64,000 nt of DNA from Ranitomeya imitator (Eukaryota): positions 135,718,001-135,782,000 of the forward strand of contig NC_091290.1 of NCBI RefSeq assembly GCF_032444005.1, read 5' to 3'. Made by a program: the position numbers and the translations under genes. The notes under the pieces are model-generated. The model was not told the origin of the DNA. It did no database searches and worked only from the letters and a program-made list of their open reading frames with translations. Each line of letters opens with the position of its first letter. The first letter of the stretch is position 1. Positions 3,001-63,200 of the stretch are shown here, piece after piece.

Positions 3001-3245
3001 ATACAGATGGGGGCGTATGGTCAGGAGCACAGTGATTATATACAGAGGGGGGGTGTATGGTCAGGAGCACAGTGATTATATACAGATGGGGGTGTATGGT
3101 CAGGAGCACAGTGATTATATACAGATGGGGGTGTATGGTCAGGAGCACAGTGATTATATACATATGGGGGTGTATGGTCAGGAGCACAGTGATTATATAC
3201 AGAGGGGGGTGTATGGTCAGGGGCACAGTGATTATATACAGAGGG
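1..3245. repeat. ~39-bp minisatellite (GTATGGTCAGGAGCACAGTGATTATATACAGATGGGGGT), ~80 copies, open at the window start
   Basis: Tandem unit read directly; only the G-run length and a few bases vary. It explains all the repetitive ORFs in 1-3250. Confidence 0.97.
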
Positions 3246-3548
3246 GTTAACGATGGTAACCAGGGTAAACATCGGGTTACTAAGCGCGGCCCTGCGCTTA
3301 GTTACCCGATGTTTACCCTGGTTACCAGCGAAGACATCGCTGGATCGGTGTCACACACGCCGATCCAGCGATGTCAGCAGGAGTCCAGCGACGAAATAAA
3401 GTTCTGGACTTTCTTCAGCGACCAACGATCTCCCAGCAGGGGCCTGATCGTTGGTCGCTGTCACACATAATGATTTCATTAACGATATCGTTGCTACGTC
3501 ACAAAAAGCAACGATATCGTTAACAATATCGTTATGTGTGAAGGTACC
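3246..3548. mobile_element. One end of a Harbinger/PIF-type MITE
   Basis: Ends in GTGTGAAGGTACC (reverse complement GGTACCTTCACAC), the same TIR class as the GGC..TTCACAC MITEs elsewhere in the window. Has an internal palindrome (GGTAACCAGGGTAAACATCGGG...CCCGATGTTTACCCTGGTTACC). The other end is not visible. Confidence 0.7.
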
Positions 3549-26639: not shown

Positions 26640-28430
26640 GACTGAGTGGGGGTCAGTGGGACCCTCATACTGTGTTGGATGCTGTGGGGTGCTATCATAC
26701 TGTCTGGGGGGGCTGTGTGGCTATCATACTGTGTTGGAGGCTGTGGGGTACTATCATACTGTTTAGGGGGTTGTGTGGCCATCATACTGTCTGGGGGGGG
26801 GGGGGGTGGCTGCGTGGCCATCTTACTGTGTTGGAGGCTGTGATGTGCCATCATACTGTCTGGGGGGGCTGTGTGGCCATCATACTGTCTGGGGGGGCTG
26901 TGTGGCCATCATACTGTGTTGGAGGCTGTGGGGTACTATCATACTATTTAAGGGGTTGTGTGGCCATCATACTGTCTGGAGGGGATGTGTGGCCATCATA
27001 CTGTCTGGGGGGGCTGTGTGGCCATCATACTGTGTTGGAGGCTGTGGGGTACTATCATACTGTTTAGGGGGTTGTGTGGCCATCATACTGTCTGGGGGGG
27101 CTGTGTGGTCATCATACTGTCTGGGGGGGCTGTGTGGCCATCATACTGTCTGGGGGGGCTGTGTGGCTATCATACTGTCTGGGGGGGCTGTGTGGCCATC
27201 ATACTGTCTGGGGGGGCAGTGTGGCCATCATACTGTCTGGGGGGGCTGTGTGGCTATCATACTGTGTTGGAGGCTGTGAGGTGCTATCATACTGTGTTGG
27301 GGGCTGTAAGGTGTATCATACTGTCTGGGGGGCTGTGTGGCCATCATACTGTGTTGGAGGCTATGAGGTGCTATCATACTGTCTGGGGGGTTGTGTGACC
27401 ATCATACTGTCTGGGGGGGGGGCTGTGTGGCCATCATACTAATGTGTTAGAGGCTGTGAAGTGCTATCATACTGTCTTTGGGGTTGTGTGACCATCATAC
27501 TGTCTGGGGGGGCTGTGTGGCCATCATACTGTCTGGGGGGGGGGGCTGTGTGGCCATCATACTACTGTGTTAGAGGCTGTGAAGTGCTATCATACTGTCT
27601 GTGGGGTTGTGTGGCCATCATACTGTCTGGGGGGCTGTGTGGCCATCATACTGTCTGGGGGGGGGCTGTGTGGCCATCATACTACTGTGTTAGAGGCTGT
27701 GAGGTGCTATCATACTGTCTGTAGGGTTGGGTGGTCATCATACTGTCTGGGGGGTGGCTGTGTGGCCATCATACTGTCTGGGGGGGAGGTTGTGTGGCCA
27801 TCATACTACTGTGTTAGAGGCTGTGAGGTGCTATCATACTGTCTGTGGGGTTGTGCGGTCATCATACTGTCTGGGGGGGTTGTGTGGCCAACATACTGTG
27901 TTGGAGGCTGTGGGTTGCTATCATACTGTCTTGGGTGCTATAGAGGACATCATATTGTCTGGGGAACTGTGGAGGACATCATAATGTCTGGGGGTCTGTG
28001 AGGCCATAATGCTGTGTGGGGACTGTGGGCCAGTAAACTGTGTAAAGGGGCTGTTGGGGCAGCATACTGTGTGGGTCGCACCATTGCGGTATCATACTTT
28101 GCTGGGCACACTGTGGGTCATTATACTGTGCATGTGAGAGGGGCACTGTGGGGTAATTCACTAAATGGGAATCATACTGTATATTGGAGACTTTTTCGAG
28201 GCATCATCATCTATTGGGGTTCTGAAAGGGGTATCCTAGTGGGTAAGAACACAAAGGGACTTCAATAGGGGCAAAATTACTGTGTTAGTACCGAAAACAA
28301 GCCTCTCTCCCTGTCTTTAAAAGTTGGCAAGTATGCCCTTCTGTAACTGTGCAAACGTGTCGTGACCCTGCCTGTGACACCAATTAGTTCTTTTGGAGGG
28401 AGTCTTTTGCTATGGGGCCCGTGATTTCTG
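26640..28430. repeat. Degenerate ~20-bp minisatellite (TGTGGCCATCATACTGTCTGGGGG) within a probable non-autonomous DNA element
   Basis: Read directly; a related array lies in opposite orientation at about 29940-30780. Confidence 0.75.
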
Positions 28431-37317: not shown

Positions 37318-40300
37318 TTAAATAAGGGAGAGAGCAGACTGGGATATATATGCCGAGGACATCCAGGGATCCCACCACGAGAGGACCCTAACTCTCCTCG
37401 ATAGACCCTGAGCCATAATAACCTCATAGCAGAAGTGTAAGTCGATCCTGGAGATCAGCTCTGCTCTGGAAGGGACATCCGAGGACTTCCAATGCTTCGC
37501 GATACATTGTCTAGCGGCAACTAGGATATTAGAAACTATGGGCCGAAGGGGGGAAGGGAGATCAATGAGGGAGATGCCTAAAACAGCGAGCTGACCACTC
37601 AGCACAAGGGGGAGACGGGTCAGATCAACAATCAAAGCTTCCACTTCGCGCCAGAAGACCTGAATCTGCGGGCACGACCACCAGATATGAGAGGAGGACC
37701 CCAAGGCGCCACATTTCCTCCAGCAGAGAGGGGAGGAAGCTGGGAAAACCTTCGCCAGGTGGACGGGGGTGAGGTACCAGTGGAGCTGAATTTTTTTCAC
37801 CTGTTCCAAGTGGCCAAGACAAGACGAAAACCTGGAAGGGTGTACCATAGCAAATTGCCAATCCTCCAGGGGGGCCTCAAAACCCAGCGCGGACTCCCAG
37901 GAAGACATGAAAGGAAGCTTGTCAGAAGATCCAAATGAAATGAGGGCTTTATAGATTATGGAGATGCCATGTGGCACCATAGTGGCCGGTCTGAAGAATC
38001 TATGGGCCGGATCCTCTGTCAAAGGCGGGGGCGTCCCGAATGGCCGACATGACCTGAGAAAGCTGCGGATCTGCAGGTATTGAAAGAAGTCAGACTTAGT
38101 AAGGGAGAATCTCCCTGAGAGGTCCTCAAACGACAAAATGCCGTCCGAGCCGAAAAGGTCCGCCACCCGGAGCACCCCACGCCTCGTCCAGGAGGAAAGA
38201 GAAATGTGGCCGATGGCACACTCCAGAGCCTGCAAAGAAACATAGTCAAACATAAATATTAGATGGGAAGTGCTAAGCAGCGCCCATAGTTTAGAAGCGT
38301 TCCTAATAGAACGGAGACAGGGACCCACAAGAGGAACTTGAAGCAGTTGAAGCTCCAAGAGCAATCTAAGCGAGTTTTTAGGGGCAAAATGAGATTCAAT
38401 CAGAAACCAGGGCAAACATGAGTTCCCCTCCCACCATATTTTAAGGGGCTCAAGGATCGCCGCCCTATAGTAAGACTACACCGCAGGAGCTCCCAACCCC
38501 CCCACAGAGTACGGTAGGGACATGATCCGACGCTTGACCCTATGGGGCTTCTTATTCCAAATAAACCGGTCTATAAGAGATTGAAAAGCTGAAATAAACT
38601 TCGAGGGGATGAAAAGGGGGAGGCACCGAAAAAGGTACATTATTTTGGGAAGGAATAGCATTTTCGCCGTTTGTATGCGGGCCATCCATGAGAGGGACGC
38701 ACTTGATAATTGCTCCATGCCCTTCCTAACCTCCGAAAGAGTTTCTTCACAATTCATACGGACTATGTTATCTAGCTTAGTTATCCTGATGCCTAGGTAC
38801 GTAAAGCCCAAGGGAGCCCAAATAAACGCATATTGAGATTGAATTTGAATCTGAAGGGGGGCGGGGAGGAAAAGGGGAAAAATTGTGGATTTGGTCAGAT
38901 TAAGCTTATAATATGAAACCGCCGAAAACTCAGATAGGATGGAAGTGATCGCGTTCAGTGAGGTTAAGGGTGAGGTGCAGGTCAGGACCACGTCGTCGGC
39001 ATAGAGACCGATTTTATGTTCAGATCCCCCCACCGCGATTCCCTTTATGTCCGCGCTCTGCCTGACCATGGCAGCCAAAGGCTCCATGACCAGAGCAAAG
39101 ATGATAGGGGAGAGGGGGCAGCCCTGACGAGTACCATTCCGAATAGGAAAAGTCCGAGACCCGAATCCCGCCGATCGAACCGACGCGCATGGATTGGAAT
39201 ATAATATCTAAAGAGCAGAAAGGCGGGCACCGCACAAAAGAATATATACTTGAGAGGATCAGCCACGTGCATATGTAAGATCAATAGAACAAAAAAAAAG
39301 AAAAAGACTATGCACACAGTGGGATCAACTGCATATAATAAATTTTATTTTACAAAACACCTCACTCCGCACAAAGGCACAGTAGGGAAAAACACACATT
39401 AAAAACAATTAAAACAAAGACAACCTATCCACATCCCCCTCAAAAATAATCCCAAGGATCCACATAGTCATATATAAATCATATAACAGACATTCAAAAA
39501 GTTTAGGCAGAATAACATCAACATAGATGATTATTTAATTCCTAATACTGCCCACTAAATAAGTCTGAATAAAGAGAATATCTCAGTTAAATCCTGCATG
39601 CAACCCGTATGACCTAGTCACATCACTGGCCCGTGATAAGTGTATAATATTGTCCAAAAGGACGTCAGACACTGAACCAGAAAAACTCACTGACATGACC
39701 CATAGATACCATGCCCCTAATCTGGCACCTCATCCAATACATTACCAAGTCTGGCAAAGCCTGTTACGGAAGAATAAATCCCTCATGAATATCCAGGGGG
39801 GAAAAGGAATAAATGTGCCTTAAAGGAAAATATGGGCACAACAGACTGGCACTGACCGGTACTATCCAATAAAGCTGGGTGATCCAGAAAACAGAGCTGG
39901 AATGAGAGGAGTCCAAAGCATATATATATATGGGAGGAGGGGGGGAGCGGATAGGAACCCAACGCGTGTCGACGCTGCTAAGGCGTCTTCGTCAGGGGAA
40001 GATAATGCCATAACCGCTTTGCCAATCTGCCCGGTGAGCCCAAATCTCTCCAATGTGAGTTCAATATAACCCCAGTGCACCCTGTCGAACGCCTTTTCGG
40101 CATCAAGCGACAGAAATACACTGGGGAGGCTCCCCCTCTCCACCACATCCAAGAGATCTATCAGACGCCTGGTGCCATCCCTGGTCTGTCTGCCAGGAAC
40201 AAACCCAACTTGGTCGGGGTGGATGAGACTAGGAAGGACCGAGAATAATCTATTGGCCCAGACTTTTGCATAAATCTTAACGTCGCAGTTTAAAAGTGCT

Positions 40301-41892
40301 ATCGGGCGGAAGTTCCCCGGAGATGTTGTGGGTTTCCCTTGTTTGGGGAGAGTCGCAATGGAAGCTTCCAACCCCTCCGCCCTAATACTGCCAACCGACA
40401 ACCAATTATTAAAAAGGCGCAAAAGATAGGGCGAGAGGACAGAGAAGAACTGAGCATAGTAAAGGAAAGAGAAGCCATCAGGCCCTGGGGAGGAACTCTT
40501 ATTGGCCTCTCTAACAATCTGCGAGAGTTCAGACTCGACAATGGGAGCGTTTAGGAAAGAGAGCTGCTCCTGGGTGACCGAGGGGAGATTAGCCCTCTCC
40601 AAGAACGCCAAAATTGACTCCCGCGAAGGCTGGGGATTTCCTGGGTCAGACCCGAGGTCATAGAGAGAGGAATAATAAGATGCAAACTCCTCAGCAATCT
40701 GAATCGGGTTGCGAACCTGGGAGCCGTCAGGCCTGAGCAAAAATGGGATCTTGGATTGAGCCTCTCTCTTCCTAACACGTCTGGCCAGAACAGCACCCGC
40801 TCGATCCCCCATTGTGTAAAATTTGGCTCTAGTTTTCCTCAGGGCCTTCTCAGCTTTGTGGAGGAGTAGATTACGAACATGCATTCGGGCCTTAGAAAGG
40901 TCAGAGAGAAGCGCTGGGGTAGGAGATAGTTTATGAGCAGCCTCCAGACGAGATAATTCGTCTAGGGCTGAATGGAGGGCCGCATTGTACTTCCTCTTAG
41001 CCTTTGCCGCCAGCTTAATGAAATGACCCCTAATTACCGCCTTGTGGGCGAACCAGAGGGTGTCATCACCTATGTCAGGAGTATCATTGGAGGCAAAAAA
41101 TTCCCCCAATGCCTCCTCTATACATTGGGAGTTGGATTGGTCAGCAAGGAGATGGGCATTGAGACGCCAGTACGCAGGAGGTCTGATGGCCAAGGGGTCT
41201 TTCAGGGTAAGGGACACCGGGGCATGGTCCGACCAGGTGATACTGCCTATATCCGATGAGATGCAGTGAGGAAGAGCCACGTCATTCACCAGCACAAAAT
41301 CAATCCTGCTATAGGAACCGTGTCTGGGAGACAAAAATGTGTAATCTCTCTCACCGCAATGCAGATATCGCCAGACATCATGCAAGTGGAAAGAGTTAGT
41401 TAGAGGCCCGACCTCGCATCTGGTCAGGGAAGAGGCAGAGCAGTCAAGAACTCTAGACATTGGGGCATTGAAATCACCAGCAATCAGTTTGTGACCGTGT
41501 TGGATATCATGTAGAGTTTTGAAAACGCCCTCCAGAAACTTAAGCTGCCCTACGTTAGGAGCGTAGATCGAGGCAATAGTATAGGGGGCATTATTAATAA
41601 GGCATAGAACCACAATGAATCTACCCAGCGGGTCCGCTATAGAGCGAACCAGCTGAAAGGAGTTGGACCTGCTGAAAAAAATGGCTACTCCCGCCTTTTT
41701 TGACGGGCCATTGGCGAAAAACTGATGCGGGAATAAACCTGATTGCATTCTGGGATTATCACATTCCAGCAAGTGAGTTTCTTGAAGACATAAAATATCA
41801 TGGCGGGATTTGCCCAACTGACGCCAGACCACAGACCTCTTGCCCGGTGAGTTGAGGCCATAAACGTTAATTGAATACAGTGAGATACTCAT
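37318..41892 (-). pseudogene. L1 ORF2 (APE endonuclease, RT, C-terminal cysteine motif), disrupted
   Basis: EN motifs LQETH and SDHAP; RT motifs LDAEKAFD, RQGCPLSP, YADD; CWRKC...HIWWSC. Removing the 796-bp insert and one TSD copy leaves one frame of 1258 codons with a single internal TAG (38478-38476). Confidence 0.92.
39206..40001 (-). mobile_element. 796-bp Penelope-pLTR-like insertion starting with a mutated minimal hammerhead
   Basis: 5-bp TSD ATAAT (39201-39205, 40002-40006). Minus strand begins CTTCCC-CTGACGA-AGACGC-CTTAGCA-GCGTC-GACAC-GC-GTT-GGG. Confidence 0.75.
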
Positions 41893-42240
41893 TGAAAAGG
41901 CATAAAAACAGTTTTACAATCCTCAGACACCGATAGCCTGTGCAAAGGCATAGAAAACATGTGGCCAATAGACTAGGACATAAGTAAGGGCAGACTGGGA
42001 ACAGGGAGGAGAGAAATAGGGAAACAAACAAGACATACGACAAATAAACCAGTGGACCGAGGTCCATTCAGGGATACCCTGAGTCCAGAAGGTGAGAATC
42101 AGAAAAACAGTTCACCTATGGGGCAAACAAATGCTGCGGGAACTCTCAAAAGAGAAACCAACGCAGCTTAAAAAAGCGAAAAAGGAAAAACCAAGTGTAT
42201 CCGTGCGGGAAAATAGCCAGGAACCATAGTTGCAGTGGGC

Positions 42241-43317
42241 TCAGGCCACCTCCCAGTCCGGTGTGATGCGAGCCCTGAGACCTCCGCCAGCTCCAGGCTT
42301 AGAAAGGTTCACGGAGATCGAGGGGTCTGGAGTCGGGAGACCCCATTTGGAGAGAGCAGAAGCTGCGTGGGACGGAGTTAGGCAGGTGGTGATTGATCCG
42401 TCTTTGCGGATGAGCAGCTTGGTAGGGAACCCCCAACGGTACAGGATGCCCTTCTCTCTGAGGATGGTAGTATAGGGGGCAAAGGCCCTCCGCAGGGCCA
42501 ATGTACCCGGGGAGAGATCCGGAAAGACTGAGATGCTTGCAAATCTTTCAGGAAGAGCTGGGTTCCTCCTTAGGGCCTGTAGAAAGTCCTCCCTCATTTC
42601 GAAAAAGTGTATGCGTGCCAGCACATCTCTGGGGATGGAGGGCCCCAGGCCAGAGGGTTTAGGGATCCTATGCACGCGGTCAATTATGAAGTCCTTTGGC
42701 GCGAACTGCGGTAGGGCTGCCGCCATAAAGTCCTGCAGAAATAGCTTCAAATCCCCTACCAGGACAGACTCCTCAATGCCTCTAAGTTTGACGATATTTC
42801 TCCTGGACCTATCTTCCAGGTCCAGGGCTTTAGAGTGAGTTTTAGCGGCCAGGGTTTGCAGGGTCTCATGGGCGTCCCAGAGTTCGTTATGAGAAGAGAC
42901 TAGCTCCGCCATCTTGCGTTCCAAACGGTCCGTGCGATTACCCAGCTCCGCCACCTCTCCTCTCAGCTCAGCCAGCATAGTGCGCATATCCTCTTGGATG
43001 GAGGTTCTGAGGTCTCCAAGTAGACCTTTGAGGAGAGAAGCGGTCACCGGACCATCGGCCGAATCAGACGCCGTACCGCCTGAATTCAACGCTGCTCTGC
43101 CTGAATGCGACGCCGCTCCGCCTGGATGCGACGCCGCTCCGTCTGGATGCGACGCCGCAGCGCCCGACTGCGACGCCTGAGCGTTGCGTTGTGAAGAGCG
43201 GGAAGGCCTGGGGGAGGACGGCGCCATCTTGGATACCGGCGGTGGCTGCGGGGTGGCCGCAAAGAAGTCAGGAATTCTCCTGGAGGGGTCACGGGTGCCA
43301 GCTCTGGATTTCCCCAT
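42241..43317 (-). CDS. L1 ORF1p (358 aa, intact)
   Basis: Coiled-coil region followed by LEDRSRRNIVKLRGIEE (RRM start) and YRWGFP, typical of L1 ORF1. Confidence 0.9.
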   Translation of the reverse strand: MGKSRAGTRDPSRRIPDFFAATPQPPPVSKMAPSSPRPSRSSQRNAQASQSGAAASHPDGAASHPGGAASHSGRAALNSGGTASDSADGPVTASLLKGLLGDLRTSIQEDMRTMLAELRGEVAELGNRTDRLERKMAELVSSHNELWDAHETLQTLAAKTHSKALDLEDRSRRNIVKLRGIEESVLVGDLKLFLQDFMAAALPQFAPKDFIIDRVHRIPKPSGLGPSIPRDVLARIHFFEMREDFLQALRRNPALPERFASISVFPDLSPGTLALRRAFAPYTTILREKGILYRWGFPTKLLIRKDGSITTCLTPSHAASALSKWGLPTPDPSISVNLSKPGAGGGLRARITPDWEVA

Positions 43318-47595: not shown

Positions 47596-47793
47596 CCAGA
47601 ACTGGAAATTACCTCAGGAAGTGTGAGTCCTGAGCTGGAAATTACCTCAGGAAGTGTGAGTCCTGAGCTGGAAATTACCTCAGGAAGTGTGAGTCCTGAG
47701 CTGGAAATTACCTCAGGAAGTGTGAGTCCTGAGCTGGAAATTACCTCAGGAAGTGTGAGCCCTGAGTTGGAAGTTACCTCAGGAAATGTGTGA
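47596..47793. repeat. 33-bp tandem repeat x6 (CCTGAGCTGGAAATTACCTCAGGAAGTGTGAGT)
   Basis: Read directly; each unit has an internal CCTGAG/CTCAGG palindrome; no spacers. Confidence 0.9.
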
Positions 47794-48174
47794 GCCCTAA
47801 GATGGGAGGCTCCTCCCGGCCATTTCCATGGCAGCTTGTTGTTAGGAGAATAATCACTTAGATTTCATATACACATTGGCCAGTAGATGACAGCAACGCA
47901 CATTTATGAGTCATCGGTATACAATGCAAATGTATTACATCCCTAGGACCCAGGAAACCCAGGAAAGAAATAATCTTGGTACCGTGTTAGCCAGTAGATA
48001 GAAAAATATTTTTTTATGTTTTTTTTATGGTTAAATTCATGTATTTTATAATCACTTATTTGCTATATATATAATTATACATTTGATATGTGTATATTTT
48101 ATCATTATTTTTAGTGGATGCTTTCCTGAAACGGAAAGTACTTGCAAGCAGCATAATACAAAGAATAGCAGGTT

Positions 48175-48212
48175 TACCCAGAATCCTTTGCAGTAGGCGG
48201 AGCTATGCAAAT
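48175..48212. promoter_or_regulatory. snRNA-type distal element in each monomer: SPH/Staf(ZNF143)-like motif, GC box, octamer
   Basis: TACCCAGAATCCTTTGCA (48175-48192, one mismatch to the recalled consensus YWCCCRNMATSCMYYRCR), GGCGGAGC (48196-48203), perfect ATGCAAAT (48205-48212); repeated every 384 bp. Confidence 0.65.
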
Positions 48213-48293
48213 CATCTCTTTCCACCCCTGTCTAATCCACAGCGCTTGGAACCGCCAAGCGTGCAATGCTGCGGATTAGTTTCTAAATTTACA

Positions 48294-48372
48294 CAGCCAA
48301 CCAATTCCTACCTGTGGACACGTGTTTCGGGCTTTAGGCCCTCATCAGCACAGGGCTGGAATTGGTTGGCTG
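48294..48372 (-). ncRNA. Type I hammerhead ribozyme, copy 1
   Basis: Stem I CCUGUG/CACAGG, CUGAUGA, stem II GGGC-CUAAA-GCCC, GAAAC-ACGU-GUC. Stem I is extended by 15 bp (CAGCCAACCAAUUCC/GGAAUUGGUUGGCUG) beyond an AGC/UA internal loop. Confidence 0.93.
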
Positions 48373-48677
48373 TATGGAGTGGGGCTCGGTGAGCAAGCGA
48401 TACATACATGCTAGCCACCTTAGGGAGAGACCCAAGTTGGGCTAAATGTAGCGGGACGAAAGAGACCGAAAAGCCCTCTACTTAAAGGAAATACATAGTG
48501 GATGCTTTCCTGAAACGGAAAGTACTTGCAAGCAGCATAATACAAAGAATAGCAGGTTTACCCAGAATCCTTTGCAGTAGGCGGAGCTATGCAAATCATC
48601 TCTTTCCACCCCTGTCTAATCCACAGCGCTTGGAACCGCCAAGCGTGCAATGCTGCGGATTAGTTTCTAAATTTACA

Positions 48678-48756
48678 CAGCCAACCAATTCCTACCTGTG
48701 GACACGTGTTTCGGGCTTTAGGCCCTCATCAGCACAGGGCTGGAATTGGTTGGCTG
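48678..48756 (-). ncRNA. Type I hammerhead ribozyme, copy 2
   Basis: Identical to copy 1, offset +384. Confidence 0.93.
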
Positions 48757-49061
48757 TATGGAGTGGGGCTCGGTGAGCAAGCGATACATACATGCTAGCC
48801 ACCTTAGGGAGAGACCCAAGTTGGGCTAAATGTAGCGGGACGAAAGAGACCGAAAAGCCCTCTACTTAAAGGAAATACATAGTGGATGCTTTCCTGAAAC
48901 GGAAAGTACTTGCAAGCAGCATAATACAAAGAATAGCATGTTTACCCAGAATCCTTTGCAGTAGGCGGAGCTATGCAAATCATCTCTTTCCACCCCTGTC
49001 TAATCCACAGCGCTTGGAACCGCCAAGCGTGCAATGCTGCGGATTAGTTTCTAAATTTACA

Positions 49062-49140
49062 CAGCCAACCAATTCCTACCTGTGGACACGTGTTTCGGGC
49101 TTTAGGCCCTCATCAGCACAGGGCTGGAATTGGTTGGCTG
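49062..49140 (-). ncRNA. Type I hammerhead ribozyme, copy 3
   Basis: Identical to copy 1, offset +768. Confidence 0.93.
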
Positions 49141-49688
49141 TATGGAGTGGGGCTCGGTGAGCAAGCGATACATACATGCTAGCCACCTTAGGGAGAGACC
49201 CAAGTTGGGCTAAATGTAGCGGGACGAAAGAGACCGAAAAGCCCTCTACTTAAAGGAAATACATAGTGGATGCTTTCCTGAAACGGAAAGTACTTGCAAG
49301 CAGCATAATACAAAGAATAGCAGGTTTACCCAGAATCCTTTGCAGTAGGCGGAGCTATGCAAATCATCTCTTTCCACCCCTGTCTAATCCACAGCGCTTG
49401 GAACCGCCAAGCGTGCAATGCTGCGGATTAGTTTCTAAATTTACACAGCCAACCAATTGAGATGATTTGCATAGCTCCGCCTACTGCAAAGGATTCTGGG
49501 TAAACCTGCTATTCTTTGTATTATGCTGCTTGCAAGTACTTTCCGTTTCAGGAAAGCATCCACTATGTATTTCCTTTAAGTAGAGGGCTTTTCGGTCTCT
49601 TTCGTCCCGCTACATTTAGCCCAACTTGGGTCTCTCCCTAAGGTGGCTAGCATGTATGTATCGCTTGCTCACCGAGCCCCACTCCATA

Positions 49689-49767
49689 CAGCCAACCAAT
49701 TCCAGCCCTGTGCTGATGAGGGCCTAAAGCCCGAAACACGTGTCCACAGGTAGGAATTGGTTGGCTG
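49689..49767 (+). ncRNA. Type I hammerhead ribozyme, copy 4 (inverted arm); predicted cleavage after 49744
   Basis: CCTGTG 49707-49712, CTGATGA 49713-49719, GGGCCTAAAGCCC, GAAAC 49733-49737, ACGT, GTC 49742-49744, CACAGG 49745-49750. Confidence 0.93.
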
Positions 49768-50440
49768 TGTAAATTTAGAAACTAATCCGCAGCATTGCAC
49801 GCTTGGCGGTTCCAAGCGCTGTGGATTAGACAGGGGTGGAAAGAGATGATTTGCATAGCTCCGCCTACTGCAAAGGATTCTGGGTAAACCTGCTATTCTT
49901 TGTATTATGCTGCTTGCAAGTACTTTCCGTTTCAGGAAAGCATCCACTATGTATTTCCTTTAAGTAGAGGGCTTTTCGGTCTCTTTCGTCCCGCTACATT
50001 TAGCCCAACTTGGGTCTCTCCCTAAGGTGGCTAGCATGTATGTATCATTATTTTTATACACTTCTATTTTACAGATTAATTGTTATTTTTTGCACTTTAT
50101 AATAATTTTTTCCACATACATTCCTTGTAACAAACGCCCCATTTAGCATACAAATGCATTTTCATTGAGCATAATTTTATGTAACTTTTAATAAATTTTT
50201 TCTGTCATTTTTATCTGAGATATTAATAAAGTAAATTTTAATTCTGGACTGTTAATTGTTTTTTTCGTTCGTGGTGTTTTGGTTGCTAATTGCCGAGTGT
50301 CCATTTGGTTCACAGTAGCACTCATTTATATTTAGGATATTTTACACTTATTGACAAAAAACTTTAATAATATTTCTCTTTTTTTTGTGCTTCTGTGTGT
50401 TGTCCCTCCTTCTCTTTGTTTGGTATTTTTATGGTATGCA

Positions 50441-53400
50441 GGCTGGCACTGTTATGGATCACTGTGGCTGACAGTTATGGGACACTGGCACTTTTATGGA
50501 TCACTGTGACTGGTACTGTTATGGATCACTGTGGCTGGTACTGTTATGGATCACTGTGGCTGGTACTGCTATGGATCACTGTGACTGGTACTGTTATGGA
50601 TCACTGTGGCTGGTACTGTTATGGATCACTGTGGCTGGTACTGTTATGGATCACTGTGGCTGGTACTGTTATGGATCACTGTGGCTGGTACTGTTATGGA
50701 TCACTGTGGCTGGTACTGTTATGGATCACTGTGGCTGGTACTGTTATGGATCACTGTGACTGGTACTGTTATGGATCACTGTGGCTGGTACTGTTATGGA
50801 TCACTGTGGCTGGTACTGTTATGGATCACTGTGGCTGGTACTGTTATGGATCACTGTGACTGGTACTGTTATGGATCACTGTGGCTGGTACTGTTATGGA
50901 TCTCTGTGGCTGGTACTGTTATGGATCTCTGTGGCTGGTACTGTTATGGATCACTGTGGCTGGTACTGTTATGGATCACTGTGACTGGTACTGTTATGGA
51001 TCACTGTGGCTGGTACTGTTATGGATCACTGTGGCTGGTACTGTTATGGATCACTGTGGCTGGTACTGTTTTGGATCACTGTGGCTGGTACTGTTATGGA
51101 TCACTGTGGCTGGTACTGTTATGGATCACTGTGGCTGGTATTGTTATGGATCACTGTGGCTGGTACTGTTATGGATCACTGTGGCTGGTACTGTTATGGA
51201 TCACTGTGGCTGGTACTGTTATGGATCACTGTGGCTGGTACTGTTATGGATCACTGTGACTGGTACTGTTATGGATCACTGTGGCTGGTACTGTTATGGA
51301 TCACTGTGGCTGGTACTGTTATGGATCACTGTGGCTGGTACTGTTATGGATCACTGTGGCTGGTACTGTTATGGATCACTGTGGCTGGTACTGTTATGGA
51401 TCACTGTGGCTGGTACTGTTATGGATCACTGTGACTGGTACTGTTATGGATCACTGTGGCTGGTACTGTTATGGATCTCTGTGGCTGGTACTGTTATGGA
51501 TCTCTGTGGCTGGTACTGTTATGGATCACTGTGGCTGGTACTGTTATGGATCACTGTGACTGGTACTGTTATGGATCACTGTGGCTGGTACTGTTATGGA
51601 TCACTGTGGCTGGTACTGTTATGGATCACTGTGGCTGGTACTGTTTTGGATCACTGTGGCTGGTACTGTTATGGATCACTGTGGCTGGTACTGTTATGGA
51701 TCACTGTGGCTGGTATTGTTATGGATCACTGTGGCTGGTACTGTTATGGATCACTGTGGCTGGTACTGTTATGGATCACTGTGGCTGGTACTGTTATGGA
51801 TCACTGTGGCTGGTACTGTTATGGATCACTGTGACTGGTACTGTTATGGATCACTGTGGCTGGTACTGTTATGGATCACTGTGGCTGGTACTGTTATGGA
51901 TCACTGTGGCTGGTACTGTTATGGATCACTGTGGCTGGTACTGTTATGGATCACTGTGGCTGGTACTGTTATGGATCACTGTGGCTGGTACTGTTATGGA
52001 TCACTGTGGCTGGTACTGTTATGGATCACTGTGGCTGGTACTGTTATGGATCACTGTGGCTGGTACTGTTATGGATCACTGTGGCTGGTACTGTTATGGA
52101 TCACTGTGACTGGTACTGTTATGGATCACTGTGGCTGGTACTGTTATGGATCACTGTGGCTGGTACTGTTATGGATCACTGTGACTGGTACTGTTATGGA
52201 TCACTGTGGCTGGTACTGTTATGGATCACTGTGGCTGGTACTGTTATGGATCACTGTGGCTGGTACTGTTATGGATCACTGTGACTGGTACTGTTATGGA
52301 TCACTGTGGCTGGTACTGTTATGGATCACTGTGGCTGGTACTGTTATGGATCTCTGTGGCTGGTACTGTTATGGATCACTGTGGCTGGTACTGTTATGGA
52401 TCACTGTGGCTGGTACTGTTATGGATCACTGTGGCTGGTACTGTTATGGATCACTGTGACTGGTACTGTTATGGATCACTGTGGCTGGTACTGTTATGGA
52501 TCTCTGTGGCTGGTACTGTTATGGATCACTGTGGCTGGTACTGTTATGGATCACTGTGGCTGGTACTGTTATGGATCTCTGTGGCTGGTACTGTTATGGA
52601 TCTCTGTGGCTTGTACTGTTATGGATCACTGTGGCTGGTACTGTTATGGATCACTGTGACTGGTACTGTTATGGATCACTGTGGCTGGTACTGTTATGGA
52701 TCACTGTGGCTGGTACTGTTATGGATCACTGTGGCTGGTACTGTTTTGGATCACTGTGGCTGGTACTGTTATGGATCACTGTGGCTGGTACTGTTATGGA
52801 TCACTGTGGCTGGTACTGTTTTGGATCACTGTGGCTGGTACTGTTATGGATCACTGTGACTGGTACTGTTATGGATCACTGTGGCTGGTACTGTTATGGA
52901 TCACTGTGGCTGGTACTGTTTTGGATCACTGTGGCTGGTACTGTTTTGGATCACTGTGGCTGGTACTGTTATGGATCACTGTGGCTGGTACTGTTATGGA
53001 TCACTGTGGCTGGTACTGTTTTGGATCACTGTGGCTGGTACTGTTTTGGATCACTGTGGCTGGTACTGTTATGGATCACTGTGGCTGGTACTGTTATGGA
53101 TCACTGTGACTGGTACTGTTATGGATCACTGTGGCTGGTATTGTTATGGATCACTGTGGCTGGTACTGTTATGGATCACTGTGGCTGGTACTGTTATGGA
53201 TCACTGTGGCTGGTACTGTTATGGATCACTGTGGCTGGTACTGTTATGGATCACTGTGGCTGGTACTGTTATGGATCACTGTGGCTGGTACTGTTATGGA
53301 TCACTGTGACTGGTACTGTTATGGATCACTGTGGCTGGTACTGTTATGGATCTCTGTGGCTGGTACTGTTATGGATCTCTGTGGCTGGTACTGTTATGGA

Positions 53401-56175
53401 TCACTGTGGCTGGTACTGTTATGGATCACTGTGACTGGTACTGTTATGGATCACTGTGGCTGGTACTGTTATGGATCACTGTGGCTGGTACTGTTATGGA
53501 TCACTGTGGCTGGTACTGTTTTGGATCACTGTGGCTGGTACTGTTATGGATCACTGTGGCTGGTACTGTTATGGATCACTGTGGCTGGTATTGTTATGGA
53601 TCACTGTGGCTGGTACTGTTATGGATCACTGTGGCTGGTACTGTTATGGATCACTGTGGCTGGTACTGTTATGGATCACTGTGGCTGGTACTGTTATGGA
53701 TCACTGTGGCTGGTACTGTTATGGATCACTGTGGCTGGTACTGTTATGGATCACTGTGGCTGGTACTGTTATGGATCACTGTGGCTGGTACTGTTATGGA
53801 TCACTGTGGCTGGTACTGTTATGGATCACTGTGGCTGGTACTGTTATGGATCACTGTGGCTGGTACTGTTATGGATCACTGTGGCTGGTACTGTTATGGA
53901 TCACTGTGGCTGGTACTGTTATGGATCACTGTGGCTGGTACTGTTATGGATCACTGTGACTGGTACTGTTATGGATCACTGTGGCTGGTACTGTTATGGA
54001 TCACTGTGGCTGGTACTGTTATGGATCACTGTGACTGGTACTGTTATGGATCACTGTGGCTGGTACTGTTATGGATCACTGTGGCTGGTACTGTTATGGA
54101 TCACTGTGGCTGGTACTGTTATGGATCACTGTGACTGGTACTGTTATGGATCACTGTGGCTGGTACTGTTATGGATCACTGTGGCTGGTACTGTTATGGA
54201 TCTCTGTGGCTGGTACTGTTATGGATCACTGTGGCTGGTACTGTTATGGATCACTGTGGCTGGTACTGTTATGGATCACTGTGACTGGTACTGTTATGGA
54301 TCACTGTGGCTGGTACTGTTATGGATCTCTGTGGCTGGTACTGTTATGGATCACTGTGGCTGGTACTGTTATGGATCACTGTGGCTGGTACTGTTATGGA
54401 TCTCTGTGGCTGGTACTGTTATGGATCTCTGTGGCTTGTACTGTTATGGATCACTGTGGCTGGTACTGTTATGGATCACTGTGACTGGTACTGTTATGGA
54501 TCACTGTGGCTGGTACTGTTATGGATCACTGTGGCTGGTACTGTTATGGATCACTGTGGCTGGTACTGTTTTGGATCACTGTGGCTGGTACTGTTATGGA
54601 TCACTGTGGCTGGTACTGTTATGGATCACTGTGGCTGGTACTGTTTTGGATCACTGTGGCTGGTACTGTTATGGATCACTGTGACTGGTACTGTTATGGA
54701 TCACTGTGGCTGGTACTGTTATGGATCACTGTGGCTGGTACTGTTTTGGATCACTGTGGCTGGTACTGTTTTGGATCACTGTGGCTGGTACTGTTATGGA
54801 TCACTGTGGCTGGTACTGTTATGGATCACTGTGGCTGGTACTCTTTTGGATCACTGTGGCTGGTACTGTTTTGGATCACTGTGGCTGGTACTGTTATGGA
54901 TCACTGTGGCTGGTACTGTTATGGATCACCGTGACTGGTACTGTTATGGATCACCGTGGCTGGTATTGTTATGGATCACTGTGGCTGGTACTGTTATGGG
55001 ACACTGTGGCTGGTATTGTTATGGATCACTGTGGCTGGTACTGTTATGGATCTCTGTGGCTGGTACTGTTATGGATCACTGTGGCTGGTACTGTTATGGA
55101 TCTCTGTGGCTGGTACTGTTATGGATCACTGTGGCTGGTACTGTTATGGATCACTGTGGCTGGTACTGTTATGGATCTCTGTGGCTGGTACTGTTATGGA
55201 TCTCTGTGGCTTGTACTGTTATGGATCACTGTGGCTGGTACTGTTATGGATCACTGTGACTGGTACTGTTATGGATCACTGTGGCTGGTACTGTTATGGA
55301 TCACTGTGGCTGGTACTGTTATGGATCACTGTGGCTGGTACTGTTTTGGATCACTGTGGCTGGTACTGTTATGGATCACTGTGGCTGGTACTGTTATGGA
55401 TCACTGTGGCTGGTACTGTTTTGGATCACTGTGGCTGGTACTGTTATGGATCACTGTGACTGGTACTGTTATGGATCACTGTGGCTGGTACTGTTATGGA
55501 TCACTGTGGCTGGTACTGTTTTGGATCACTGTGGCTGGTACTGTTTTGGATCACTGTGGCTGGTACTGTTATGGATCACTGTGGCTGGTACTGTTATGGA
55601 TCACTGTGGCTGGTACTCTTTTGGATCACTGTGGCTGGTACTGTTTTGGATCACTGTGGCTGGTACTGTTATGGATCACTGTGGCTGGTACTGTTATGGA
55701 TCACCGTGACTGGTACTGTTATGGATCACTGTGGCTGGTATTGTTATGGATCACTGTGGCTGGTACTGTTATGGGACACTGTGGCTGGTATTGTTATGGA
55801 TCACTGTGACTGGTACTGTTATGGATCACTGTGGCTGGTATTGTTATGGATCACTGTGGCTGGTATTGTTATGGGACACTGCTTGATACTGTTATGAGAC
55901 ACTATGACTGACACTCTTATTTTCATGGTACTCAGGCTGGCAATGTTATGGATCACGGCCGCTGGCAGAGTTATGGGGCATTGCTTGGCACTGTAATGGA
56001 TCACTGTGATTGGCACTTTTATGAATCACTGTGATTGGCACTGTTATGTGATACTGGGTGACACTATTATGGGGCATTGCTTGGCACTGTTATGCATTAC
56101 TGTGGCTGGCACTGTTATGGAGCACTGGCAGTGTTATAGATCAGTATAGTTGGCACTGTTATAGGTAAGTGTGGC
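50441..56175. repeat. 25-bp minisatellite (GGTACTGTTATGGATCACTGTGGCT), ~217 homogeneous copies to about 55875, then degenerate
   Basis: Read directly. Variant units recur at offsets of 575, 775 and 1825 bp. Confidence 0.97.
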
Positions 56176-59807: not shown

Positions 59808-61548
59808 CAGGTCCTTCTCCAAAAATTAGCATATAGTGTTAAATTTCATTATTTACCATAATGTAATGATTACAATTAAACTTTCATATATTATAGATTC
59901 ATTATCCACCAACTGAAATTTGTCAGGTCTTTTATTGTTTTAATACTGATGATTTTGGCATACAACTCCTGATAACCCAAAAAACCTGTCTCAATAAATT
60001 AGCATATTTCACCCATCCAATCAAATAAAAGTGTTTTTTAATAACAAACAAAAAAAACAACAAATAATAATGTTCAGTCATGCACTCAATACTTGGTCGG
60101 GAATCCTTTGGCAGAAATGACTGCTTCAATGCGGCGTGGCATGGAGGCAATCAGCCTGTGACACTGCTGAGATGTTATGGAGGCCCAGGATGCTTCAATA
60201 GCGGCCTTAAGCTCATCCAGAGTGTTGGGTCTTGCGTCTCTCAACTTTCTCTTCACAATATCCCACAGATTCTCTATGGGGTTCAGGTCAGGAGAGTTGG
60301 CAGGCCAATTGAGCACAGTAATACCATGGTCAGTAAACCATTTACCAGTGGTTTTGGCACTGTGAGCAGGTGCCAGGTCGTGCTGAAAAATGAAATCTTC
60401 ATCTCCATAAAGCATTTCAGCCGATGGAAGCATGAAGTGCTCCAAAATCTCCTGACCAACACCAGTAGCTGACATGGCACCCCACACCATCACTGACTGT
60501 GGGTACTTGACACTGGACTTCAGGCATTTTGGCATTTCCTTCTCCCTAGTCTTCCTCCAGACTCTGGCACCTTGATTTCCGAATGACATGCAAAATTTGC
60601 TTTCATCAGAAAAAAGTACTTGGGACCACTTAGCCACAGTCCAGTGCTGCTTCTCTGTAGCCCAGGTTAGGCGCCTCTGCCGCTGTTTATGGTTCAAAAG
60701 TGGCTTTACCTGGGGAATGCGGCACCTGTAGCCCATTTCCTGCACACGCCTGTGCACGGTGGCTCTGGATGTTTCCACACCAGACTCAGTCCACTGCTTC
60801 CTCAGGTTCCCCAAGGTCTGGAATCGGTCCTTCTCCACAATCTTCCTCAGGGTCCGGTCTCCTCTTCTCGTTGTACAGCGTTTTCTGCCACATTGTTTCC
60901 TTCCAACAGACTTACCATTGAGGTGCCTTGATACAGCACTCTGGGAACAGCCTATTTGTTGAGAAATTTCTTTCTGGGTCTTACCCTCTTGCTTGAGGGT
61001 GTCAATGATGGCCTTCTTGACATCTGTCAGGTCGCTAGTCTTACCCATGATGGGGGTTTTGAGTAATGAACCAGGCAGGGAGTTTATAAAAGCCTCAGGT
61101 ATCTTTTGCATGTGTTTAGAGTTAATTAGTTGATTCAGAAGATTAGGGTAATAGGTCGTTTAGAGCAGAGGTCCCCAACTCCAGTCCTCAAGGCCCACCA
61201 ACAGGTCATGTTTTCAGGATTTCCTTTGCATTGCACAGGTGATGCAATTATTACCTGGGCAAGACTAAGGAAATCCTGAAAACATGACATGTTGGTGGGC
61301 CTTGAGAACTGGAGTTGGGGACCTCTGGTTTAGAGAACCTTTTCTTGATATGCTAATTTATTGAGACCGTTTTTTTGGGTTATCAGGAGTTGTATGCCAA
61401 AATCATCAGTATTAAAACAATAAAAGACCTGACAAATTTCAGTTTGGTGGATAATGAATCTATAATATATGAAAGTTTAATTGTAATCATTACATTATGG
61501 TAAATAATGAAATTTAACACTATATGCTAATTTTTTGAGAAGGACCTG
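59808..61548 (-). mobile_element. Tc1 (DD34E) transposon with ~200-bp ITRs; transposase ORF 60086-61048 with an in-frame internal deletion
   Basis: TA|CAGGTCCTTCTC...GAGAAGGACCTG|TA; motifs FSDES, FQHD and SPDLNPIE with 34-residue D-E spacing. Confidence 0.93.
61166..61327. mobile_element. hAT MITE (162 bp) nested in the Tc1
   Basis: CAGAGGTCCCCAACTCCAGT TIR; perfect 8-bp TSD GTTTAGAG (61158-61165, 61328-61335). Confidence 0.9.
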
Positions 61549-61849
61549 TATATTCAAAAACCTCATAGGCATATATAAGGCTGTAAATTCGGGTCGAGAA
61601 ATCAGCGATCAGTCCGGACATCATTTTATTTCATAAATCAATAATACTCGTGAAAATAAGAAACTTTGTATTATATCGGAGAAATCCGCTTCTTTCTCCT
61701 CTTGGATTCATCTTTTTTTTTTTTCAAAATACTCAGTTCATGGATAAAATCGGTCTTCAGTTAATATTGACTGAAATAGGAGGTGATAGTTGGTGCTTAT
61801 AAAGTTCTATGGAGAGCTGTAACTGTGGTTTCAGGAGATCGTGTAGCGG

Positions 61850-63200
61850 AATGTCTGTGTGTTCCACTAACTCCACCCTAGAATGTCTGTGTGTTCCACT
61901 AGCTCCTCCCTATAATGTCTGTGTGTTCCACTAGCTCCTCCCTAGAATGTCTGTGTGCTTCTCTAGCTCCTCCCTAGAATGTCTGTGTGTTCCTCTAGCT
62001 CCTCCCTAGAATGTCTGTGTGTTCCACTAGCTCCTCCCTAGAATGTCTGTGTGTTCCTCTAGCTCCTCCCTAGAATGTCTGTGTGCTCCACCAGCTCCTC
62101 CCTAGAATGTCTGTGTGTTCCACTAGCTCCTCCCTAGAATGTCTGTGTGTTCCACTAGCTCCTCCCTAGAATGTCTATGTGTTCCACCAGCTCCTCCCTA
62201 GAATGTCTGTGTGTTCCACTAACTCCACCCTAGAATGTCTGTGTGTTCCACTAGCTCCTCCCTAGAATGTCTGTGTGCTTCTCTAGCTCCTCCCTAGAAT
62301 GTCTGTGTGTTCCATTAGCTCCTCCCTAGAATGTCTGTGCGTTTCACCAGCTCCTCCCTAGAATGTCTGTGTGTTCCACTAGCTCCACCCTAGAATGTCT
62401 GTGTGTTCCACTAGCTCCTCCCTCTAATGTCTGTGTGCTCCTCTAGCTCCTCCCTAGAATGTTTGTGTTCCACTAGCTCCTCCCTAGAATGTCTGTGTGT
62501 TCCACCAGCTCCTCCCTAGAATGTCTGTGTGTTCCACTAGCTCCTCCCCAGAATGTCTGTGTTCCACTAGCTCCACCCTAGAATGTCTGTGTGTTCCACT
62601 AGCTCCTCCCTCTAATGTCTGTGTGCTCCTCTAGCTCCTCCCTAGAATGTCTGTGTGTTCCACTAGCTCCTCCCTCTAATGTCTGTGTGCTCCTCTAGCT
62701 CCTCCCTAGAATGTTTGTGTTCCACTAGCTCCTCCCTAGAATGTCTGTGTGTTCCACCAGCTCCTCCCTAGAATGTCTGTGTGTTCCACTAGCTCCTCCC
62801 CAGAATGTCTGTGTTCCACTATCTCCTCCCTAGAATGTGTGTTCCACTAGCTCCTCCCTAGAACGTCTGTGTTCCACTAGCTCCTCCCTAGAATGTCTGT
62901 GTGTTCCACTAGCTCCTCCCTAGAATGTCTGTGTTCCACTAGCTCCTCCCCAAAATGTCTGTGTTCCACTATTTCCTCCCTAGAATGTCTGTGTTCCACT
63001 AGCTCCTCCTTAGAATATCTGTGTTCCACTAGCTCCTCCCTAGATTGTCTGTGTTCCACTAGCTCCTTCCTAGAATGTCTGTGTGTTCCACTAGCTCCTC
63101 CCTAAAATGTCTGTGTGTTCCACTAGCTCCTCCCTAGAATGTCTGTGTGTTCCACCAGCTCCTCCCTAGAATGTCTGTCTGTTCCACTAGCTCCACCCCT
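61850..63200. repeat. 29/31-bp minisatellite (CTAGAATGTCTGTGTGTTCCACTAGCTCCTCC)
   Basis: Read directly. Confidence 0.95.

What the first reader, a model, noticed from the sequence alone, without database searches (positions are those of the whole stretch)
48114..50046. Young 384-bp hammerhead-ribozyme repeat (retrozyme / satellite-2-like) in a frog-type genome
Seen: every full monomer has a textbook type I hammerhead (CUGAUGA, 4-bp stem II, GAAAC-ACGU-GUC, 6-bp stem I extended by a further 15 bp past an internal loop). It also has other hairpins (AATCC-CAGC-GCTTGG/CCAAGC-GCTG-GGATT; CCCAA/TTGGG). Copies are almost identical (I saw one substitution, in copy 3). Established: tandem type I hammerhead repeats of a few hundred bp (newt satellite 2, animal non-LTR retrozymes) are cut to monomers that can circularise, and the palindromic stem III allows dimeric cleavage. 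Inference: this locus makes 384-nt linear or circular RNAs and belongs to a currently mobile family. I do not know of this family being described in anurans.
Basis: partly seen in the sequence, partly recalled or inferred. Interest (0 to 1): 0.92.

Follow-up and report, generated by a model that had tools for sequence, protein, structure and literature searches.

The report
Frog hammerhead retrozyme, fold-back insertion
This is a real, very young 1.9-kb insertion of a 384-base non-coding repeat that carries a self-cleaving hammerhead RNA motif, but such "retrozymes" are already described in frogs, so it is a clean example and not a discovery.

Summary
Window 48114-50042 consists only of a 384-bp non-coding unit, with four complete type I hammerhead motifs and a single substitution (48939).

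It is not one tandem array. It has two inverted arms: 3.5 units with the ribozyme on the minus strand (48114-49458), and 1.52 units on the plus strand (49459-50042). The arms are joined bluntly, and both RNA-3' ends face outward against a perfect 14-bp target-site duplication.

This tandem-plus-inverted, 5'-truncated layout is the published insertion style of Penelope-like elements. The unit meets the published features of animal non-LTR retrozymes that could be tested here.

The novelty claim is out of date. X. tropicalis hammerheads were reported in 2014. A 2026 preprint finds non-LTR retrozymes in all seven amphibians sampled and 57 families in Xenopus. This scan has also followed up the same 384-bp family at other places in this genome.

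Transcription, cleavage and circles were not shown here. The runs that hold the unit are only guessed to be RNA. Only the minus-strand arm could release whole monomers.

Rfam scores the motif below its curated threshold (30 against 52 bits).

Verdict: a new member of a known kind, of low to moderate interest. Its value lies in the insertion anatomy.

The parts
48100..48113 (.). Left copy of the 14-bp target-site duplication TATCATTATTTTTA
   Evidence: Perfect direct repeat that abuts both ends of the insertion (family D6)
48114..49458 (-). Long arm: 1345 bp = 3.50 units, ribozyme sense on the minus strand. It runs from monomer phase +11 (inner end, RNA 5' side) to +203 (outer end, RNA 3' side). 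There are 2 nt (TA) of microhomology with the target.
   Evidence: one mismatch to the unit, at 48939
49459..50042 (+). Short inverted arm: 584 bp = 1.52 units, ribozyme sense on the plus strand. It runs from monomer phase +99 (inner end) to +298 (outer end). There are 4 nt (TATC) of microhomology with the target.
   Evidence: no mismatch to the unit
50043..50056 (.). Right copy of the 14-bp target-site duplication
48294..48366 (-). Type I hammerhead motif; predicted cut between 48317 and 48316 on the minus strand
   Evidence: HH9, 30.1 bits, E 6e-5
48678..48750 (-). Type I hammerhead motif; predicted cut between 48701 and 48700
49062..49134 (-). Type I hammerhead motif; predicted cut between 49085 and 49084
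49695..49767 (+). Type I hammerhead motif; predicted cut after 49744. It is the only site on this strand.
48317..49084 (-). Two complete 384-nt monomers bounded by cut sites (49084 to 48701 and 48700 to 48317). These are the only whole monomers the locus could release.
   Evidence: Derived from the cut sites. Circular fold of the monomer -143.9 kcal/mol, z -6.6
49458..49459 (.). Blunt head-to-head joint of the two arms, with no shared or extra letters. On the long arm it lies 10 nt downstream of the ribozyme cut site.

Best explanation
This is one insertion of a non-autonomous, non-coding hammerhead repeat, an animal non-LTR retrozyme, made by target-primed reverse transcription on both strands of a staggered 14-bp break. 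Each freed DNA 3' end paired by 2-4 nt with an internal position of a retrozyme RNA template longer than one unit. That template was either an uncleaved multimer or a circular monomer copied round and round. Each end was extended toward the RNA 5' side, and the two cDNAs were joined bluntly in the middle. The result is two inverted arms with RNA-3' ends outward inside one target-site duplication. The enzyme was most likely the RT/GIY-YIG protein of a Penelope-like element acting in trans, because this tandem-plus-inverted, 5'-truncated layout is that class's signature. If the long arm is transcribed on the minus strand, neighbouring hammerheads can pair through their ACACGUGU palindrome into a double hammerhead, cut after GUC, and release 384-nt monomers that a host ligase could circularise. 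Shown here: the anatomy, the motif, the lack of coding capacity and the abundance. Inferred: the enzyme, the template form, transcription, cleavage and circularisation.
For: The 14/14 target-site duplication abuts the repeat on both sides. The insertion is exactly 1345 + 584 = 1929 bp of unit sequence with no other letters. The arm ends lie at four different monomer phases (+11, +203, +99, +298), with 2-nt and 4-nt microhomology at the outer ends and no poly(A). There is 1 mismatch in 1929 bp. All core residues and helices are present. I compared 36 distinct natural hammerheads with the same core and helix III, taken from metagenome contigs. Helix I keeps 6/6 pairs in 23 of them and helix II keeps 4/4 pairs in 35. 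They use 24 different helix I and 32 different helix II sequences, so the window's motif fits a covarying natural architecture. The dimer is predicted at -93.1 kcal/mol against 2 x -41.2, and in a tandem transcript the two palindromes pair with each other. Every reading frame has 2-7 stops per unit, and GC is 48.7%. Published definitions match. Retrozymes are short tandem repeats of 150-450 bp with type I hammerheads, GC below 50%, TSDs longer than 4 bp, and dimeric cleavage in amphibians (PMC7229834). PLE insertions are 5'-truncated, form partial tandems, and often carry an inverted 5'-truncated copy (PMC8557442). Retrozymes occur in all sampled amphibians and are related to PLE pLTRs. High copy number is suggested by summed contig depth of about 3e5 on the unit against 26-71 on the unique right flank of the DNA run, and by 20 runs in 10 studies holding the stretch.
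Against: Rfam's curated threshold is not reached (30.1 against 52 bits). No Penelope-like ORF lies in the window, and no PLE of this genome could be compared with the unit, so the enzyme is inferred from layout alone. The 30-40-bp 'tail' often seen at PLE insertions is absent. L1-type twin priming gives the same topology. No run on record as RNA holds the unit, and contigs cannot show RNA ends or circles. In the 2026 preprint only one of nine frog retrozyme dimers cleaved in vitro, so a perfect motif does not guarantee activity. Part of the 3.5-unit arm could have grown later by unequal crossover.
Confidence: 0.8

Rival explanations
1. It is a heavily 5'-truncated insertion of an autonomous Penelope-like element. 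On this reading the 384-bp unit is simply that element's terminal repeat (pLTR), not an independent non-autonomous family.
For: PLE pLTRs carry hammerheads, and PLE insertions are 5'-truncated, tandem and inverted. In Xenopus, 24 of 57 retrozyme families match PLE termini.
Against: The repeating unit itself is 384 bp, and each arm holds more than one unit. The template therefore repeated every 384 nt, not every 3-5 kb as a PLE partial tandem would. No ORF lies in or next to the insertion. The hammerhead is a canonical form with a helix III, not the minimal form reported as typical of PLEs.
Confidence: 0.08
2. It is a retrozyme insertion, but it was mobilised by a LINE reverse transcriptase through classical twin priming, not by a Penelope-like element.
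For: Twin priming gives two inverted segments with 3' ends outward inside one TSD of similar length (established knowledge for L1). A LINE with AP endonuclease and RT domains lies in the same window.
Against: Neither outer end has a poly(A) or microsatellite tail, and the two arms end at unrelated internal phases. Published co-occurrence and sequence relatedness link retrozymes to PLEs, not LINEs.
Confidence: 0.08
3. It is ordinary satellite DNA built at the DNA level by unequal crossover plus a local inversion, or it is an assembly artefact of a palindromic long read.
For: Tandem arrays can grow by unequal crossover, which is the model favoured in the 2026 preprint's discussion. Perfect inverted repeats are a known artefact of chimeric reads.
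Against: The insertion is discrete and bounded by a perfect 14-bp duplication of unique AT-rich target sequence. The flanks on the two sides differ, so the contig is not a mirror image. The arms differ in length and phase. Other notes of this scan report the same layout at other loci; I did not check these.
Confidence: 0.03

Closest known systems
Animal non-LTR retrozymes (Cervera and de la Pena 2020, PMC7229834; axolotl Rtz331/Rtz353)
   Same: It is a short non-coding tandem unit (384 bp, within the 150-450 bp range) with GC below 50% and a type I hammerhead in each unit. Helix III is weak, so cleavage should need a dimer. The TSD is longer than 4 bp and the predicted monomer fold is highly paired. 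Helix III of 2 bp closed by a tetraloop resembles the axolotl HHR_Amex2 form.
   Different: No RNA evidence was obtained here. The unit shares only the 33-nt ribozyme core with every other hammerhead locus I could fetch. The fold-back, two-arm layout is not described in that paper.
Frog non-LTR retrozyme families of Li, Clavereau and Pollet 2026 (bioRxiv 10.64898/2026.07.22.740005)
   Same: It is the same class in the same animal group. That paper reports retrozymes in all seven amphibians sampled, mean consensus length 316 bp, mostly 7 repeat units or fewer, mostly intergenic, and related to PLE pLTRs.
   Different: I could not establish whether this 384-bp family is one of their 57 Xenopus families. 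Their consensus tables are not held, and their primers match the unit no better than chance. They explain arrays by local amplification, whereas here more than one unit per arm was laid down at insertion.
Penelope-like element insertions (Craig et al. 2021, PMC8557442)
   Same: 5'-truncation, a partial tandem and an adjacent inverted 5'-truncated copy, all inside one target duplication.
   Different: There is no RT/GIY-YIG ORF, the unit is 384 bp, there is no 30-40-bp tail, and the hammerhead is canonical and not minimal.
Rfam Hammerhead_HH9 (RF02275) and the hammerhead clan CL00010
   Same: The motif aligns over the full model length and has the same core, helix lengths and loop layout.
   Different: It scores 30.1 bits against a gathering score of 52. 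Helix III is shorter (2 bp plus a palindromic tetraloop), and the context is a repeat and not an intron.
Newt satellite 2 (as summarised in PMC7229834)
   Same: It is an amphibian tandem repeat of about 330-380 bp whose transcripts carry a type I hammerhead that works as a dimer.
   Different: This copy is a small dispersed insertion with a TSD, not part of a long satellite block.

Membership tests
Hammerhead ribozyme, type I | Conserved core: C3 U4 G5 A6 N7 G8 A9, G12 A13 A14, A15.1-U16.1, and H17 that is not G | tested here: met
   All are present in the four copies; C17 lies at 49744 on the plus strand
Hammerhead ribozyme, type I | Three helices around the core, with helix I open-ended | tested here: met
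   Helix I is 6 bp plus an 18-bp extension, helix II is 4 bp, and helix III is 2 bp plus a tetraloop. The minimum-energy fold of a single motif does not form helix III; the dimer does.
Hammerhead ribozyme, type I | Score at or above the Rfam gathering threshold | tested here: not met
   Best clan member is HH9 at 30.1 bits against 52; no match at gathering
Hammerhead ribozyme, type I | Helices supported by compensatory change among natural relatives | tested here: met
   In 36 distinct motifs, helix I is 6/6 in 23 and helix II is 4/4 in 35, with 24 and 32 different sequences. The relatives were selected by core and helix III, so only helices I and II are tested.
Hammerhead ribozyme, type I | Self-cleavage after H17 | not testable with these tools
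   This needs in vitro transcription. Only 1 of 9 frog dimers cleaved in the 2026 preprint.
Animal non-LTR retrozyme | Type I hammerhead in every unit of a short tandem repeat (150-450 bp) | tested here: met
   384-bp unit; four complete motifs in 5.02 units
Animal non-LTR retrozyme | Non-coding, without LTRs, with GC below 50% | tested here: met
   2-7 stops per unit in all six frames; GC 48.7%; nothing but unit sequence between the TSDs
Animal non-LTR retrozyme | Target-site duplication longer than 4 bp when present | tested here: met
   14 bp, perfect
Animal non-LTR retrozyme | Expressed as linear and circular monomer RNAs | tested here: inconclusive
   Small runs guessed to be RNA hold exact 309-320-nt contigs while the unique flank has zero depth. 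The library kind is a guess, and a high-copy repeat would look the same in DNA.
Animal non-LTR retrozyme | Co-occurrence with Penelope-like elements in the same genome | not tested
   There is none in this window. Notes of this scan report full-length PLEs elsewhere in the genome, unchecked by me.
Autonomous Penelope-like element (pLTR) | RT plus GIY-YIG ORF between or beside the repeats | tested here: not met
   No ORF in the insertion. The nearest RT has an AP-endonuclease domain and is therefore a LINE.
Autonomous Penelope-like element (pLTR) | Partial tandem plus an inverted 5'-truncated copy | tested here: met
   compared with PMC8557442
Autonomous Penelope-like element (pLTR) | [quoted passage not shown] | tested here: not met
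   Unit sequence abuts the TSD at both ends

The most novel reading that the evidence does not exclude
The locus is a frozen integration intermediate. It would show that retrozyme arrays are born multimeric, by priming on both target strands at arbitrary internal phases of an end-less (circular) or multimeric RNA, and do not grow later by unequal crossover. It would also show that such fold-back copies, when read through, make a 588-bp perfect hairpin RNA that could feed small-RNA silencing of the family.
Probability: 0.35. Interest if true: 0.45.

Novelty: new member of a known kind. Interest (0 to 1): 0.25.

Why it matters
The class is known, so the locus does not open a new question. Its use is as a clean, dated specimen. 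The insertion is intact, with only one substitution since it went in, so every junction can be read.

- Both arms hold more than one unit.
- Both RNA-3' ends face outward and start at unrelated phases, with 2-4 nt of microhomology.
- There is no tail and no poly(A).

This anatomy ties retrozyme mobility to the Penelope-style integration pathway, whose mechanism is still called undefined in the literature (PMC8557442). It also argues that at least part of the tandem structure arises at integration. A genome-wide tally of such junctions in this family could separate a circular template from a linear one without any bench work.

Tried and rejected
- **Rfam at curated thresholds, whole window:** no match. 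The only other sub-threshold match, tsr33 at E 8.8, is chance.
- **Metagenome contigs scanned for the core plus helix III pattern:** 42 loci were found, but none shares more than the 33-nt ribozyme with the unit. No relatives of the 384-bp family were obtained.
- **Oligonucleotides of the 2026 frog retrozyme preprint compared with the unit:** the best was OLZL5, score 11 against a null maximum of 10, among 16 primers tested. This is not above chance and lies on the wrong strand, so no link to REP4 or the Penelope-6/Neptune families can be claimed.
- **Coding capacity:** 384 is a multiple of three, so an endless ORF on a circle was possible. It is rejected because every frame has stops.
- **Promoter-like motifs:** there is one octamer ATGCAAAT, antisense to the ribozyme, and CCAAT in both strands of the extended helix I. 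These are single short matches and I give them no weight.
- **Empty-site allele:** one contig of the DNA run joins 48100 to 50104, whereas 48113 to 50057 would be expected, and the letters between are unknown. This is suggestive only and I make no claim.
- **Expression:** two run searches and one read-laying gave only contigs from runs of guessed kind, so there is no verdict.
- **Species identity:** not pursued.

Full report
**What is in the sequence**

Between 48114 and 50042 the window holds 1929 bp made only of a 384-bp unit. Tandem Repeats Finder reports 3.5 copies at 99% for 48112-49458. The repeat finder shows that 49459-50046 is the reverse complement of the same unit, a 588-nt arm reported as 100% complementary. 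It also shows that a 14-nt string, TATCATTATTTTTA, stands at 48100-48113 and again at 50043-50056.

I phased both arms against one monomer numbered from the ribozyme cut site.
- **Long arm (48114-49458).** The ribozyme sense is on the minus strand. It runs from monomer position +11 at its inner end, through three full turns, to +203 at its outer end.
- **Short arm (49459-50042).** The sense is on the plus strand. It runs from +99 at the inner end to +298 at the outer end.

Both RNA-3' ends therefore face outward and abut the duplicated 14-mer. The unit and the target share 2 nt (TA) at one outer end and 4 nt (TATC) at the other. The inner joint is blunt. There are no letters that belong to neither unit nor flank, no poly(A), and one substitution in the whole insertion (48939).

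**The ribozyme**

The core string occurs four times in the window and nowhere else, against 0 expected. Three copies are on the minus strand and one is on the plus strand.

Rfam gives nothing at curated thresholds. With E-value reporting, all four align end to end with Hammerhead_HH9 at 30.1 bits, E 6e-5, against a gathering score of 52.

Read directly, every invariant core position is present.
- Helix II has 4 bp.
- Helix I has 6 bp and continues past a small internal loop into an 18-bp helix (-45.5 kcal/mol, z -6.8).
- Helix III is only A-U and C-G closed by ACGU, so ACACGUGU is an 8-nt palindrome.

Two motifs are predicted to pair through that palindrome, at -93.1 kcal/mol against 2 x -41.2. 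In a tandem transcript the two palindromes pair with each other. This is the double-hammerhead arrangement described for newt and Penelope-associated hammerheads.

As an outside check I pulled 42 metagenome contigs that carry the same core and helix III. Among 36 distinct motifs, helix I keeps 6/6 pairs in 23 and helix II keeps 4/4 in 35. They use 24 different helix I and 32 different helix II sequences. The window's motif therefore fits a natural, covarying architecture. None of those contigs shares anything else with the 384-bp unit.

**The unit**

It is non-coding, with 2-7 stops per unit in each of six frames. GC is 48.7%.

**What kind of thing it is**

These are the published features of animal non-LTR retrozymes. 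They are short tandem units of 150-450 bp, each with a type I hammerhead. They have GC below 50% and no LTR, PBS or PPT, and their target duplications are longer than 4 bp. In amphibians they have weak-helix-III ribozymes that need a dimer (PMC7229834).

The two-arm layout matches the published insertion style of Penelope-like elements. That style is 5'-truncation, partial tandems, and often an inverted 5'-truncated copy at the 5' end (PMC8557442). The 30-40-bp tail often seen there is absent here.

The window holds no Penelope-like ORF. The RT at 39862-41892 (minus strand) carries an AP-endonuclease domain, so it is a LINE. A Tc1-type transposase lies at 60086-61111. The insertion is thus a stand-alone non-autonomous copy, not the terminal repeat of a neighbouring Penelope.

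**How it most likely arose and works**

The simplest account is target-primed reverse transcription at both nicks of a 14-bp staggered break, each primed by microhomology at an internal position of a template longer than one unit. The two cDNAs were then joined.

The arm ends fall at four unrelated phases and both arms exceed one unit. The template was therefore multimeric or circular, and at least part of the tandem structure was made at integration. The long arm could still have gained whole units later by unequal crossover, the model favoured in the 2026 preprint.

The long arm stops 10 nt short of the ribozyme cut site. This could mean a template whose 5' end was made by self-cleavage, or it could be chance (about 1 in 18).

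Only the minus-strand arm has consecutive cut sites, so it alone could release whole monomers (48317-48700 and 48701-49084). The plus-strand site after 49744 stands alone.

A transcript through the whole insertion would contain a 588-bp perfect hairpin with an 88-nt loop (pair I2).

**Abundance, age and expression**

Twenty public runs from ten studies, under at least seven coded organism labels, hold the stretch almost word for word. They include runs of only 5-70 million letters.

In the large DNA run, 3057 contigs lie on the stretch, 1565 of them at 99% or more. Summed depth on the unit is about 3e5, against 26-71 on the unique right flank. The tool warns that this is not a copy number, but it points to thousands of units.

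One substitution in 1929 bp and an intact duplication indicate a recent insertion. My inference is well under a few million years at ordinary vertebrate neutral rates.

One contig joins 48100 to 50104 and may be an allele without the insertion, but the coordinates are 60 nt off and the evidence is inconclusive.

Expression is not shown. The runs labelled "RNA?" are guesses, they are held as contigs, and a high-copy repeat would appear in them either way.

**Novelty**

- About 9,000 minimal hammerheads were reported in X. tropicalis in 2014 (PMC4209133).
- Li, Clavereau and Pollet (bioRxiv 2026) found non-LTR retrozymes in all seven amphibians sampled, defined 57 families in three Xenopus species, and related them to Penelope pLTRs. 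They saw cleavage in vitro for one of nine dimers.

I could not tell whether this 384-bp family is one of theirs.

Notes of this same scan show that the 384-bp family, and the same fold-back layout, were already followed up at other places in this genome. I treated these as leads, not evidence.

**Verdict**

It is a new member of a known kind, and its interest lies in the insertion anatomy.

Noticed in passing
window 47973-48011: A 39-nt piece of the left flank is itself a very high-copy repeat end. Hundreds of contigs in all four runs stop or start there and run on into unrelated sequence, with summed depth up to 1.5e5 in the DNA run and 400-1200 in the small runs. It is probably the terminus of another abundant mobile element.
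   Followed up: no
window 50485-56127: A 25-bp satellite (about 226 copies, 95% matches) starts 430 bp to the right of the insertion. A 33-bp minisatellite lies at 47602-47790 on the left. Penelope-like elements are reported to favour microsatellite-rich targets, and the target here is an AT-rich gap between two arrays.
   Followed up: no
window 37318-43317, minus strand: LINE-type retrotransposon ORFs. ORF 39862-41892 (676 aa) has AP endonuclease and RT domains, and ORF 38476-39087 holds the end of the RT domain, so the RT seems split by a frameshift or stop. Neighbouring ORFs of 358 and 365 aa have no Pfam match.
   Followed up: partly
window 60086-61111, minus strand: A 341-aa ORF with Tc1-type HTH and DDE_3 transposase domains. 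The DDE match covers only the end of the profile, so the copy may be damaged.
   Followed up: no
window 48229: In the DNA run about 45% of the summed depth reads A instead of T at this position of the unit. The family therefore has at least two abundant sub-variants.
   Followed up: no
window 49459-50046 in public runs: Six coded organism labels (A-F) hold 95-100% of the sampled 31-mers of this non-coding stretch, and a seventh (G) holds about 55%. The labels are coded, so I cannot say whether this reflects sister species, hybrids or something less ordinary.
   Followed up: no
window 1-3246, 61849-63198, 26694-28021: There are further long arrays of 39-bp, 32-bp and 29-bp units. The window is almost entirely repeats and mobile elements, and no host gene was recognised.
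   Followed up: no
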